Positions 38,074 to 42,381 of a stretch of 64,000 bases of DNA are shown in pieces (positions within the stretch are counted from its first letter, which is position 1; the number at the start of each line of letters is the position of its first letter). The notes beneath the pieces are model-generated. The model saw nothing but the letters and a program-made list of their open reading frames with translations. It was not told where the DNA came from and ran no database searches. Source of the DNA: Pelomyxa schiedti (lineage: Eukaryota; Protista; Evosea); NCBI GenBank assembly GCA_020536535.1, contig JAHLWZ010000870.1, positions 1,156 through 65,155 on the forward strand. Reading direction: 5' to 3'. Both the position numbers and the translations under genes were made by a program.

Positions 38074-41000
38074 TTAGGGTGACTTTGTGGCCTGAATGAA
38101 GGAATTTGCGGCATCGAGGATGTGTTGCCTCTTGGAGGGGACGTCAGTTAGGGAAGATGATGATAGTACTGTGCCTATCCATCGCTGGGCTTTGTTGGAG
38201 AGGAGAAGCCACTGCGTTTGCTGAAGTGGGAAGCGCTGCGCGAAGATAGATATGGCTGTGGCGGTGGCCCATACTTCCTTGGCAAGAGAGGGGTCCGGAA
38301 CCCACTCGCTGAGTTGCGGTGGGATGGATTTGTAGAAGTTGTCCATGTCTAGTTGCAGCACCTGGCCAAACTGCGCCGAGGGTATCCATGACCCATTGGC
38401 AGTTTGCAATAATATCTTTTTGTTTGTTGTTAGTGCGGTTTATTTAAGGTGTTTTTAATGGAGTGCATAGAGTACCAACTGCTCAAGGGGCCCAGAGTGC
38501 GCCAATGAGGTCACTTTGGGGGTTACAGAACTCAAGGGCTTCACGGATGTTATACTCGGAGGAGGGATATGTGGTGCTGAGGGAACAACAGATGCTGGCG
38601 GGACTTCGGAGGTGGGGAGATTCGAGCGCAAGTTTACACCCGTTTTAACCACTGATCCACTCATGATGTCAGCAAGAGAAGTCTTCCCAACACCCATATT
38701 CCCCAAGAAAATCACTGCACGTATTTCATTTTGAATAAATGGAGATTGACAGAACCTTTCAGATCAGAACCCGGATACTCAGACGAAAAGTCTACAAGAA
38801 TTTAGTTGTAATTAGATAAATGAAGCTTACTGGGAAAAAAGGCCTGTATAGCCTCTTTTAGGTTACTCAAAGTTTTGACGGACACCTCAAATATCAGAGC
38901 TTTGTACTTTTCACTTAGAGTTGCAGCTTCTTGATGGGAAACCTATAAAAAAGTAAGGTAACCAATCCAATAGTGTCGTGTTAAGAAAACCTCTCGGTTG
39001 CCAATGAGGTCTAGTTTATTCCCAAGAATAAGGAATGACACCTTTGTTTGCACTGTGGACATCACACTCTTTATCCACAATTCAGCTGCAGTAAAGCTCT
39101 CTCTAGAGGTAATGGAATACCTTTAAAACAGAATTACCTACAGGTTTCGCAAGTATATGGGATAAAACATGACTATGGCCCCCTGTGCTCCCTGAGATAA
39201 TGTGAAAAATATTGAACAACTGTGGAGCAAAGAGGAATTACCCTGTAGTACATTGGAGCCAGTGCCCCATAGCGCTCTGTGGAAGGAAAGTGAGTACCCC
39301 GCAAAGGAGTTCTAAATACCTTGGCCTGCAGTATCCCATAGTTGTACAGTACGGTCAATTCCATTAGACTGCAAGTTCATGGTATGGAAGTTGGCCCCAA
39401 CAGTACACTTACAGCTTTCAGCAAATGTCCTCCTTCCGAATTGGACTGACACGTCAGAGTTTTGTGCTACCTCCTCAGGTTGTATTGAACTTGGAACACT
39501 GGGTGATCGCGAGAAAAGCGAAAATGAAGGAAAGGATGGCAGCATGTTCCGTAACGAGTCAAAGAAGGAGCCACCAGAGTATCTTGAGGCAGAGGCAAGT
39601 TCTGATGTACCCATGCTTACATTGCACGCTGCTGCTGAAACGTGGCCATTTAAACATTCAATCGCTGCGGACTGCTCCTGGACCATGCTATTCATGTCTT
39701 GCATGGCTTGTTGTAAAGTTTCAATGTCCTCTTTTTTTTCGTTTGAGTGATAGTGGAGCTTGAATGAAGATACTCTGTAAGCTCTCAATACTCTCGTCTT
39801 CCGTTGGTGGGGACTTCACTGCATTACATGCAACCAAGTTCATGGAACCTGTAGAAATCACACATGACATACAAAAGAATAGGAAAACCTGAGACTGGTG
39901 TTTCTTGTTTCTGTACAGCAACAAAGCTTGTTTCAGAACTCAGTAAACTGTATCTAGGAATAATAGTGATACCAAAAAGAGAATGTAAGGCTCCAACCTT
40001 AGAGCAATTTGAGTTATTTCCTCGGAATTACGGGGAGATGCCAATTCAAGAGCTCTGGAAAGGATAATGAAATTACAAAGAAAGTTAGCAGAATTATACT
40101 TTATTCTCGATTTTGCAGCAAGGCGGGCAACCACATGCTCATCTTGCGCCGGGTGTGTGCCCAACCTTCAAAGACAATAAAAATTGATGGAATAAGGGGA
40201 TATGGGACATGCGTGATCTTGTGATCGTAAGAGCGAGAGTGGGCACTTGTGGTGTGCACCCTGACAACAACTGTATCTGGTACTGTGGCACCAGTGGGAA
40301 ATATCCCATAGCCTTTCTCCCATAAGATTTTGTTTCCATATCTAGAAGAAATACATATAACAAGGTCTCCATAGGAAGAAGCCATTTCTTCTGGTACCTG
40401 GATGACACCTGGGACCCCCCAAAGTATTTCCACTTTGATAATCATCGGCTATGAGAGTGTGTCAAGGTGGTGCTGGACAAAGTCAATGAAACCTGCAAGC
40501 AAAACTTCAACTGGAGCATAACTTTCTCTTCAATCACTTCTTCAGATGACACAAATTCTGCCTGGGCCGGCAAATGGTAAGGTACACCCAAACCAAAATG
40601 AAACCTTTCCATGTCCAATACTGGCCAAACCTAAGTTTTTCAATGGTCAAAAATCTGAAAACACAATAGAAATTCACAACCAGTCATCAGAGTGGCACTG
40701 GCATCAGCCCCAATGCCGAAGGTGAATATTCGGCTGTCTCCTTCAATGTTGTGAGAAGAGTAAAGATTCTTACTACACACCACAATGTTGATAAGCATAG
40801 TGAAGTAATTCACTCTCAGGGCACTCTCCATCTGTCTAACCAACGAATTAAAAATACTCAACCTAAAAGAGAGAAGACCAAGACAAAAATTTGACGAGGG
40901 AAAGTTGGGTGACGCTTTGATCCAAAAATAAACTTAAGAGGTGACAAAAGGTCTGTACCACCCATGTCAGCACTCATGCTGTCAATGTGAGAACATGCTT

Positions 41001-42381
41001 TAGCAAAACTTTTTTTTTTTTTGATCAGTAGGGTGCTGGTGAATTCATCAACTTTGTATCATTATATCTCTGAGAATCCGAGAATAGAGGTTTATACTGT
41101 GACCCAAATCCAATAACTATTAAAAATGGGAAAAACTTAGGCTAAATCTGAGCCTACCATTAAAAAGAGAGCCAACTGGCAAACTCCGTAAAAAAATTTG
41201 CAGGGCATTTTTGGCTTGGTTCATCCTAAAAGAAAGGTTATTGTATCCTTTAGGTAGAGGATTACTTAGATCCTGCCATACTTCCACTCTGATCCACAAT
41301 AAATACGATTTCACTCAGAGATTCATCATCAAGACTTCCTTCAATGTCATGCAAAAAATGAACAACAGCAGTGTGGTTCCCATCAGGGTCCTGAAAGTGA
41401 TCATTACGTATTTCCACAAAAAAACATAGACATACTATTTCCAGAAAAGCAGATGAAGGCACATCCATATGTGCAAAAAGAGCCAAATACTTTTTTAACT
41501 TGGCTAATGTGAGATTCTACGAATTATGGCTTCTGAAGAAACGACCTTATTACAACTAAAGGAGACCCTAGCAGAATTTCCCGAAATGGAGGGTATAACA
41601 GAAATGTCTTGATTAAATGTAATTGCCTGGATACTGGTTGCCATATTCAGTCTTATATCAGCAGAGAACCTTGCAGTGGGCCCCTAGGTAGTGTGAAAGG
41701 GATGCAGGGAGTAAGGTGAAAACAGGAAGTTTGTGTGTCCAAGGAAAGACGAGTTTCATTCTGCCACCAGCTGCTTGTAGTTCAGTGACATATTTGAACC
41801 ACACTTTGCAGCTAGATCCTGCTGGAAACCTGCCAATGCTGAGGCTGATAACACCCTGTTATTTAATGAGACAGCACTTCTCTTGTCTTGTAAAAGAGAA
41901 ATACATTGGTACTCTGTTCCATTAACACAGCTGTATGCCCAGCAGAAACAGCATCATCATATGTGTTTACTGCCTAATTTGAAATAGTTAAAAAAAAAAT
42001 AGAATGGAAGACTTCAAATGCAAACTTTTTCCCGAGCCTTGCACTGTGCCACAATTATGGGCTGATCAGCAACTTGCACTTCCACATGATACAGTGCACT
42101 TCGAGACTCCTGCCAAAATTGATACCTGTTTGACAGAAAGCGCCAATTCAGAAAGTCAAACCCAAAAAAAAGCCCCTCGCTCACTTGGCTTCAATGTCCA
42201 ACGCCGTGTCATTTACGAAACGTTGCTCCACACAGCACAACGCCGTAGCTCCCCTAATTTCACAAACAAGGCTCGACTCGGCCAACGGGAAAAACGAACG
42301 TTGGTTGGTGTTAGATCTCAGACCAGACACTTCCAACGGCAGATCCGTGTCGTACGCCTCGGAACCCTGCCTGCCAAACAT
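38074..42381 (-). CDS. VWA5A-like protein (VIT + vWA + C-terminal domain) with inserted SNARE motif and circularly permuted Rab-like GTPase
   Basis: VIT-like VEQRFVN..DIEAK; MIDAS FIVDQSGSM; QAKNALQIFLRSLP; RIFTFGIG. Then a SNARE heptad, WDTAGQERY, GNKLD and GNMGVGKTS. C-terminal LQTANGSW..VWATA..QWLLLSNKAQRWI is typical of VWA5A. Confidence 0.85.

What the first reader, a model, noticed from the sequence alone, without database searches (positions are those of the whole stretch)
38074..42381. VIT-vWA scaffold carrying a soluble Qa-type SNARE motif next to the permuted Rab
Seen: between the vWA region and the VWA5A C-terminal domain lies SIESLQKDIETLQQAMQDMNSMVQEQSAAIECLNGHVSAAACNVSMGTSELASASRY (about 39579-39795). 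It has no following TM helix, and the permuted Rab comes next. Known: this heptad pattern with a zero-layer Gln (V.EQ) and 'NV..G..EL..A..Y' is the syntaxin/Qa SNARE motif. VWA5A/PARP4-type VIT-vWA proteins have no settled function. Inference: two core parts of endosomal fusion (Qa-SNARE and Rab5) have been inserted into one soluble protein. It could be a nucleotide-switched SNARE decoy or tether, or an integrated-decoy sensor for effectors of intracellular bacteria that target Rabs and SNAREs.
Basis: partly seen in the sequence, partly recalled or inferred. Interest (0 to 1): 0.82.

Follow-up and report, generated by a model that had tools for sequence, protein, structure and literature searches.

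The report
Amoeba scaffold carrying syntaxin and Rab5
One expressed gene of the anaerobic amoeba Pelomyxa builds a soluble scaffold protein whose floppy loop holds an unanchored copy of a membrane-fusion helix and a rearranged Rab5-type switch; sister genes put other core cell parts in the same loop, which points to an undescribed bait or targeting system whose function is untested.

Summary
Confirmed. One 28-exon gene (KAH3745480.1, Pelomyxa schiedti, 1026 aa): VIT-vWA, syntaxin-type Qa motif, Rab5-like domain in order G2-G3-G4-G5-G1, VWA5A C-domain. RNA contigs join the vWA end, SNARE, Rab and C-domain in one frame; VIT and MIDAS exons lack RNA cover. The motif hits only syntaxins in the PDB (E 1e-4), keeps all 16 core layers, but misses Pfam's cut-off and lacks Habc, anchor and the -3 Phe: not a syntaxin. 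The permuted Rab folds in AlphaFold (pLDDT 80) and recurs, with five shared introns, in a PARP4-like paralog. The same loop holds R-SNAREs (three paralogs), a Q-SNARE-like motif, an AGC kinase or a mu-adaptin domain in this genome, and a Qa motif or eIF5A piece in Arcella. Best reading (0.5): a bait loop in an autoinhibited VIT-vWA trap, working like ITIH4's bait region. Main rival (0.3): endosome-targeting or tomosyn-like regulator. No function is shown. The scan noted this insert pattern before on other DNA of this genome; I found no paper describing it.

The parts
38074..42381 (-). Whole gene, 28 exons, 1026 aa (database protein P0001 = KAH3745480.1, Pelomyxa schiedti)
   Evidence: the 14 downstream introns are seen in RNA
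41790..42276 (-). VIT domain (aa 36-144)
   Evidence: Pfam PF08487 E=5e-21; not covered by RNA
40553..41312 (-). vWA domain (aa 260-412) with intact MIDAS residues (DxSxS, T, D)
   Evidence: Pfam VWA_3 E=3e-30; sequence
39914..40552 (-). Hybrid-1b, three-helix bundle and VIT part 2 (aa 413-551); its end marks the start of the variable loop
   Evidence: conserved anchor across homologs; domain names from PMC10539598
39579..39792 (-). Syntaxin-type Qa-SNARE motif (aa 579-635), zero-layer Q604, intron 39731-39773; no Habc, no membrane anchor
39540..39575 (-). Short amphipathic, Phe-rich segment after the SNARE motif (aa 637-648); similar segments occur in paralogs with and without a SNARE
   Evidence: hydrophobic moment in the top 2-4% of the protein
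38656..39461 (-). Circularly permuted Rab5-like GTPase (aa 675-853), order G2-G3-G4-G5-G1; G1 at 38703-38680 follows a 12-codon linker exon (38756-38791); no prenylation motif
   Evidence: Rab5A E=8e-30; RNA joints; AlphaFold pLDDT 80, pTM 0.77; fold search
38488..38655 (-). Pro/Ser-rich linker (aa 854-909)
   Evidence: sequence
38074..38487 (-). VWA5A-type C-terminal helical domain (aa 910-1026, includes intron 38416-38475)
   Evidence: hits C-termini of VWA5A-type proteins; profile hits PDB 9e5c vWA protein E=2e-4 and PARP4 1572-1642 weakly, E=0.44

Best explanation
A bait-display protein. Shown: a cytosolic VWA5A-type scaffold whose variable loop, between the VIT-vWA core and the C-terminal domain (CTD), carries a syntaxin Qa helix and a complete but permuted Rab5-like domain, both without membrane anchors. 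From the literature: in Dictyostelium Vwa1 and human VWA5A the CTD is predicted to dock on the vWA domain at the end of this disordered loop, proposed as autoinhibition, and Vwa1 associates with an SCF/RING ubiquitin ligase. Inferred: the two inserts mimic the host's membrane-fusion parts. A protein that binds, cuts or modifies syntaxins or Rab5, most plausibly an effector of an intracellular bacterium or virus, engages the loop. The CTD is then released, and the Mg2+-binding vWA/MIDAS surface clamps the intruder or passes it to ubiquitin or ADP-ribosylation machinery, as ITIH4 traps a protease that cuts its bait region. Each paralog displays a different bait.
For: At the same site in this genome: R-SNAREs over Pfam's cut-off in three VIT-vWA genes (C824 60 bits, C4 48, C399 38; about 0.07 expected by chance). 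In C824 the R-SNARE shares one open frame with the CTD. Also a Q-SNARE-like motif above all 1880 shuffles (L023), an AGC-type kinase fused in frame to both loop anchor and CTD (L035), and a mu-adaptin domain (L032; E=2e-16; continuity read from DNA only). In Arcella: a Qa motif (syntaxin-13 E=8e-6) and an eIF5A N-domain (E=1e-15). eIF5A and a kinase have no shared role in fusion; their common trait is being conserved housekeeping parts. Anchors and Habc are stripped while interaction surfaces are kept. The equivalent region is the bait of ITIH4 (PMC7793589) and is under recurrent positive selection in PARP4 (PMC4038475). Bacteria that infect amoebae attack these classes: Legionella Lpg1137 cleaves and SidE modifies syntaxin-17, and VipD targets Rab5 (PMC12317070). 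The scaffold sits on a long branch (1.68).
Against: No experiment, no known attacker, and no effector or signalling domain in this protein. Most inserts I verified are traffic proteins, which also fits targeting. The Rab keeps catalytic residues and the SNARE keeps all core layers, as working modules would. The outer surface of the SNARE helix, which an effector would read, has diverged strongly (5 of 41 non-layer positions identical to syntaxin-13). No selection test was possible with one genome. The link between ITIH4's bait and this loop is positional analogy, not alignment. Legionella is aerobic and is not known to me to infect Pelomyxa.
Confidence: 0.5

Rival explanations
1. Traffic regulator or targeting device. 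The Qa helix pairs with the cell's Qb/Qc/R SNAREs as a soluble competitor (like tomosyn or amisyn) or docking arm, and the Rab5-like domain binds Rab5 effectors or GEFs, bringing the scaffold to endosomes. The permutation ties the SNARE arm directly to switch I, so GTP/GDP could gate it.
For: All 16 layers are bundle-compatible and 9 of 16 match syntaxin-13, against 5 of 41 other positions (hand count; Fisher p=0.001). G1-G5 and the catalytic Gln are intact. The model folds. An amphipathic segment follows the motif where the anchor would be. Both inserts belong to one pathway.
Against: The sister permuted Rab (P0120) has no SNARE and no CTD, and SNARE-bearing paralogs show no Rab motifs. Non-traffic inserts use the same site. 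No ortholog with this insert pair was found outside this genome. The layer bias would also survive from a donor without continued selection.
Confidence: 0.3
2. Tolerated passengers. The loop is disordered and accepts captured gene pieces that then decay without function.
For: The motif is below Pfam's cut-off; several relatives show only remnants that do not pass a shuffle test (P0021, P0041, P0040). Inserts turn over fast.
Against: Two permuted Rabs only 38% identical keep the P-loop, all G motifs, five intron positions and a linker exon of the same 12 codons. The SNARE core has no proline or charge. SNARE capture recurs at least five times in this genome's family.
Confidence: 0.13
3. Self-assembly code. 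Qa, Qc and R motifs on different VIT-vWA paralogs zip together into a hetero-oligomer of scaffolds, some carrying PARP.
For: The family holds Qa (this gene), Q/Qc-like (L023) and R (L027, L028, C399) motifs.
Against: No Qb-bearing paralog was seen among about 20 loci read; three R copies against one Qa; it does not explain the other inserts.
Confidence: 0.07

Closest known systems
VWA5A/BCSC-1 and Dictyostelium Vwa1-5 (PMC10539598)
   Same: Cytosolic VIT-hybrid-vWA-helix bundle-loop-CTD plan with intact MIDAS.
   Different: The loop is described as disordered; the word SNARE does not occur in that paper or its supplement. Here it holds two folded modules.
ITIH4 (PMC7793589)
   Same: VIT-vWA core followed by a variable region that acts as bait; trapping needs a cation in the vWA domain.
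   Different: Secreted; its bait is an unstructured protease substrate; no VWA5A CTD. The working likeness is inferred.
PARP4/vPARP (PMC4038475, PMC12280208)
   Same: VIT-vWA, a fast-evolving disordered region, then a helical C-domain (MINT) that the CTD profile resembles weakly. The genome has three MVP loci, and a PARP4-like paralog carries the same permuted Rab.
   Different: This protein has no PARP domain; vault binding is untested.
Syntaxins (13, 7, 17) and soluble SNARE regulators tomosyn/amisyn (own knowledge)
   Same: Qa motif in register over 57 residues; a soluble SNARE helix on a large scaffold, as in tomosyn.
   Different: No Habc, no anchor, Met at layer -3; tomosyn and amisyn carry R motifs.
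cpRAS (PMC2430557) and YRG/YlqF GTPases
   Same: Circularly permuted GTPase; cpRAS also occurs with a vWA domain or inside an alpha-2-macroglobulin-like region.
   Different: Orders are G3-G4-G5-G1-G2 and G4-G5-G1-G2-G3. Here it is G2-G3-G4-G5-G1 and Rab5-derived; no paper holds that string.
Plant NLR integrated decoys (own knowledge)
   Same: Copies of diverse host proteins fused at a fixed site in an expanded family.
   Different: No NB-ARC, LRR or death domain; analogy only.

Membership tests
VWA5A/Vwa1 clade | VIT domain followed by vWA | tested here: met
   Pfam E=5e-21 and 3e-30
VWA5A/Vwa1 clade | MIDAS residues | tested here: met
   DxSxS, T and D present
VWA5A/Vwa1 clade | C-terminal helical CTD after a variable loop | tested here: met
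VWA5A/Vwa1 clade | Intracellular: no signal peptide or transmembrane helix | tested here: met
   maximum 19-residue hydropathy 1.41, none at the N-terminus; no dedicated signal-peptide predictor was run
VWA5A/Vwa1 clade | CTD docks on vWA | not tested
Syntaxin (Qa-SNARE) | About 60-residue motif, 16 layers, zero-layer Gln, closest to Qa | tested here: met
Syntaxin (Qa-SNARE) | Pfam SNARE over cut-off | tested here: not met
   12.2 bits against 26.8
Syntaxin (Qa-SNARE) | Phe at layer -3 | tested here: not met
   Met594; syntaxin-17 also lacks it
Syntaxin (Qa-SNARE) | N-terminal Habc bundle and C-terminal membrane anchor | tested here: not met
   only 27 residues separate the scaffold anchor from the motif; no hydrophobic helix
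Syntaxin (Qa-SNARE) | Forms a four-helix bundle | not testable with these tools
   needs biochemistry or a multimer model
Rab5 group | G1-G5 motifs and Rab5-like sequence | tested here: met
   best PDB hits Rab5A/B/C, E=8e-30; G5 is SVK, not SAK
Rab5 group | Order G1-G5 and C-terminal prenylation motif | tested here: not met
   G1 follows helix 5; the domain is internal
Rab5 group | Binds and hydrolyses GTP | not testable with these tools
   the model supports a complete fold
cpRAS | Ras-family domain in order G3-G4-G5-G1-G2 | tested here: not met
YRG/YlqF GTPases | Order G4-G5-G1-G2-G3 | tested here: not met
   only the G4-G5-G1 stretch superposes
PARP4 | PARP catalytic domain | tested here: not met
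   present in paralog P0120
PARP4 | MINT vault-binding domain | tested here: inconclusive
   CTD profile to PARP4 1572-1642 E=0.44
ITIH4-type bait trap | Secreted ITIH heavy chain | tested here: not met
   no signal-like N-terminus; VWA5A-type CTD
ITIH4-type bait trap | Bait engagement triggers cation-dependent trapping | not testable with these tools
   experiment needed

The most novel reading that the evidence does not exclude
Amoebae use an expanded family of cytosolic VIT-vWA proteins as a cell-autonomous defence: each displays copies of host proteins that pathogens attack, and engagement of the bait trips an ITIH4-like trap. This member guards the syntaxin/Rab5 fusion step with a GTPase permutation not described before. 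It would give VWA5A and PARP4 a testable ancestral function.
Probability: 0.4. Interest if true: 0.92.

Novelty: new variant of a known kind. Interest (0 to 1): 0.72.

Why it matters
Intracellular VIT-vWA proteins (the human tumour suppressor candidate VWA5A, vault PARP4) have no settled function. A lineage that fills their variable loop with recognisable host domains shows what the loop may be for and makes bait-versus-targeting directly testable, for example in Dictyostelium. The G2-G3-G4-G5-G1 order would be a third kind of GTPase permutation and puts both chain ends at switch I. If the bait reading holds, the inserts list which host proteins are under attack in anaerobic amoebae.

Tried and rejected
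Two separate genes or a frameshift: rejected by RNA joints and one open frame. Generic coiled coil: rejected, PDB hits are syntaxins only. G1 as a stub of a second Rab: unlikely, given the shared linker exon with P0120 and the model. Single-sequence folding failed (pLDDT 35). A word search with the Arcella helix-plus-SNARE region found only itself; it has low sensitivity and does not show absence. The Atlas gave one sub-threshold SNARE cluster (0.86) and nothing for the larger piece. R-SNARE-like remnants seen by eye in P0021 and P0041 did not pass PDB, Pfam or shuffle tests; the Qc-like motifs of L023 and P0004 pass only my local shuffle test. A common origin of the Pelomyxa and Arcella Qa inserts is undecided (p-AU 0.19). 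Paper searches for VWA5A+SNARE, Dictyostelium+t-SNARE+VIT, R-SNARE+VWA+Amoebozoa and the motif order found nothing relevant. From memory only, unverified: UniProt may annotate a t-SNARE coiled coil in Dictyostelium VIT-vWA protein DDB_G0292028; if so, the domain pair is on record in a database.

Full report
Gene and source. The minus-strand region 42381-38074 is one gene. A search with its last exon returned the database protein P0001, KAH3745480.1 of Pelomyxa schiedti, 1026 aa. It maps on the window as 28 exons. Pfam finds VIT (36-144), vWA (260-412) and Ras (677-818). RNA contigs from single-cell libraries show 14 listed splice joints from 40493 down to 38415. One 1353-nt contig runs from the post-vWA helices through SNARE, Rab and into the C-terminal domain (CTD); a second starts 7 nt away in the same exon and reaches the end of vWA. 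These exons give one stop-free frame of 616 aa; one intron is GC-AG. The VIT and MIDAS exons are not covered by RNA, but their introns are ordinary GT-AG of 40-59 nt. All RNA runs are one sample. I joined exons only in a local script to count stops; database searches used single exons or the database's own record, never a joined model of mine.

The SNARE motif. Residues 579-635 match syntaxin-17 (E=1.2e-4), -7 and -13 and no unrelated protein in the PDB. With the Arcella motif added, the profile gives 2e-10 for syntaxin-13 and 3e-10 for syntaxin-17. The layers read I L I L M M V Q I L V A V G L A: all compatible with a bundle, 9 of 16 identical to syntaxin-13 against 5 of 41 elsewhere (hand count). 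Pfam's SNARE model stays below cut-off; it covers mainly the half after the zero layer plus the anchor. Habc, anchor and the -3 Phe are absent. So this is a syntaxin-derived motif, not a syntaxin, and its subtype cannot be fixed. One RNA contig has E603G beside the zero layer (allele or error).

The Rab. Best structural relatives are Rab5A/B/C (E=8e-30), but strand 1, the P-loop and helix 1 follow helix 5 after a 12-codon exon. With an alignment, AlphaFold gives pLDDT 80 and pTM 0.77, with the C-terminal strand/P-loop/helix at 85-91. The alignment supplied Rab P-loop pieces in that place, so the model is not fully independent. In the fold search, ordinary Rabs align to model residues of about 21-158, whereas natural permuted GTPases (YlqF, YqeH, YjeQ, RsgA) align through 184-191, consistent with the moved segment filling the normal slot. 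A PARP4-like paralog, P0120 (KAH3765890.1), ends in the same permuted domain at 38% identity, with five shared intron positions and an equal-length linker exon. One origin followed by retention is the simplest reading. It has no SNARE. The order differs from cpRAS and YRG (PMC2430557), and no paper holds the string.

The site. Homologs share the core up to a conserved anchor and diverge after it. Boland et al. (PMC10539598) describe this stretch as a disordered loop leading to a CTD predicted to dock on vWA. In about 20 paralog loci read here, the loop holds an R-SNARE (L028, in one frame with the CTD; L027), a Q-SNARE-like motif (L023), an AGC-type kinase (L035), a mu-adaptin domain (L032), a coiled coil (L020), the permuted Rab (L024), or low-complexity sequence. 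A third R-SNARE lies just after VIT and vWA hits on C399, by coordinates only. Three of about 16 R-SNARE loci in such genes is far above the 0.07 expected. These paralog models rest on DNA, not RNA. Outside the genome, Arcella intermedia has one member with a Qa motif and one with the eIF5A N-domain; Dracoamoeba has a Qc-like motif and a ubiquitin scrap. P0001 and these amoebozoan proteins (P0004/P0027, P0036, P0042/P0239) form a clade at 100/99; branching inside is unresolved, and a shared origin of the two Qa inserts is neither shown nor rejected. No protein outside this genome with VIT-vWA plus Rab appeared among the 120 listed of 314 hits; that search is limited by length and word index.

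Mechanism. Shown: architecture, expression of the 3' two thirds, conserved core layers and G motifs, recurrence of inserts. From papers: predicted CTD autoinhibition and ubiquitin-ligase association (PMC10539598); bait-triggered, cation-dependent trapping by ITIH4 (PMC7793589); positive selection on the disordered region before PARP4's C-domain (PMC4038475); effector attack on syntaxin-17 and Rab5 (PMC12317070). Inferred: the loop is bait and its engagement frees the vWA surface (0.5). A traffic regulator that really pairs with SNAREs and Rab5 partners remains plausible (0.3), and the two are not exclusive. Neutral carriage (0.13) and paralog self-assembly (0.07) fit less well.

Novelty. The scaffold family is known; this insert pair and this permutation were not found in the papers searched. 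The library lacks most subscription papers, and a database annotation of a t-SNARE in a Dictyostelium member is an unchecked memory. Earlier notes of this scan report the same pattern on other DNA of this genome (talin FERM, longin plus R-SNARE, actin, ubiquitin-E2, ESCRT-Rab, spliceosome pieces). They agree with my reading, which I stated before seeing them, but they are not independent evidence and I checked only part. Verdict: real, a new variant of a known kind, one clear example of a possibly new bait system. Interest 0.72.

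Noticed in passing
L024 (G000:C184), protein P0120: PARP-VIT-vWA protein ending in the same permuted Rab5-like domain; it also has a Cys-rich hydrophobic stretch at aa 1233-1258.
   Followed up: partly
L028:4922-5677 minus (C824); L027:3620-4297 plus (C4); G000:C399:5341-5499 minus: R-SNARE motifs inside VIT-vWA genes, all over Pfam's cut-off.
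   Followed up: partly
L023, L026, L027, L033 (C193, C975, C4, C476): Four VIT-vWA genes end in a shared CFIATAA-type tail followed by a hydrophobic segment instead of the VWA5A CTD; no Pfam hit.
   Followed up: partly
L035:4062-5882 minus (C222): AGC-type kinase between loop anchor and CTD, with a Pkinase_C-like motif placed before the kinase, an unusual order.
   Followed up: no
L032:5336-6340 minus (C238): Mu-adaptin C-terminal domain directly after the vWA anchor.
   Followed up: partly
L021:6163-6528 minus (C187): A Rab-like P-loop exon just upstream of a VIT-vWA-CTD gene; possibly an N-terminal GTPase.
   Followed up: no
P0042 (Arcella intermedia) aa 640-692; P0040 (Pelo_11227): eIF5A N-domain in the loop of an Arcella member; P0040 has a patatin domain far downstream and a possibly decayed SNARE register.
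   Followed up: partly
window 35754-37540 minus: Neighbouring gene with a D123/CDC123-type ATP-grasp domain (E=3e-19) ending in a possible CaaX motif (CLIS); the N-gap at 37108-37208 is flanked by a duplicated stretch, likely an assembly artefact.
   Followed up: no
window 39676: T>C in one RNA contig gives E603G next to the zero-layer Gln.
   Followed up: no
G000:C352, C810, C516: Three major vault protein loci in the genome.
   Followed up: no
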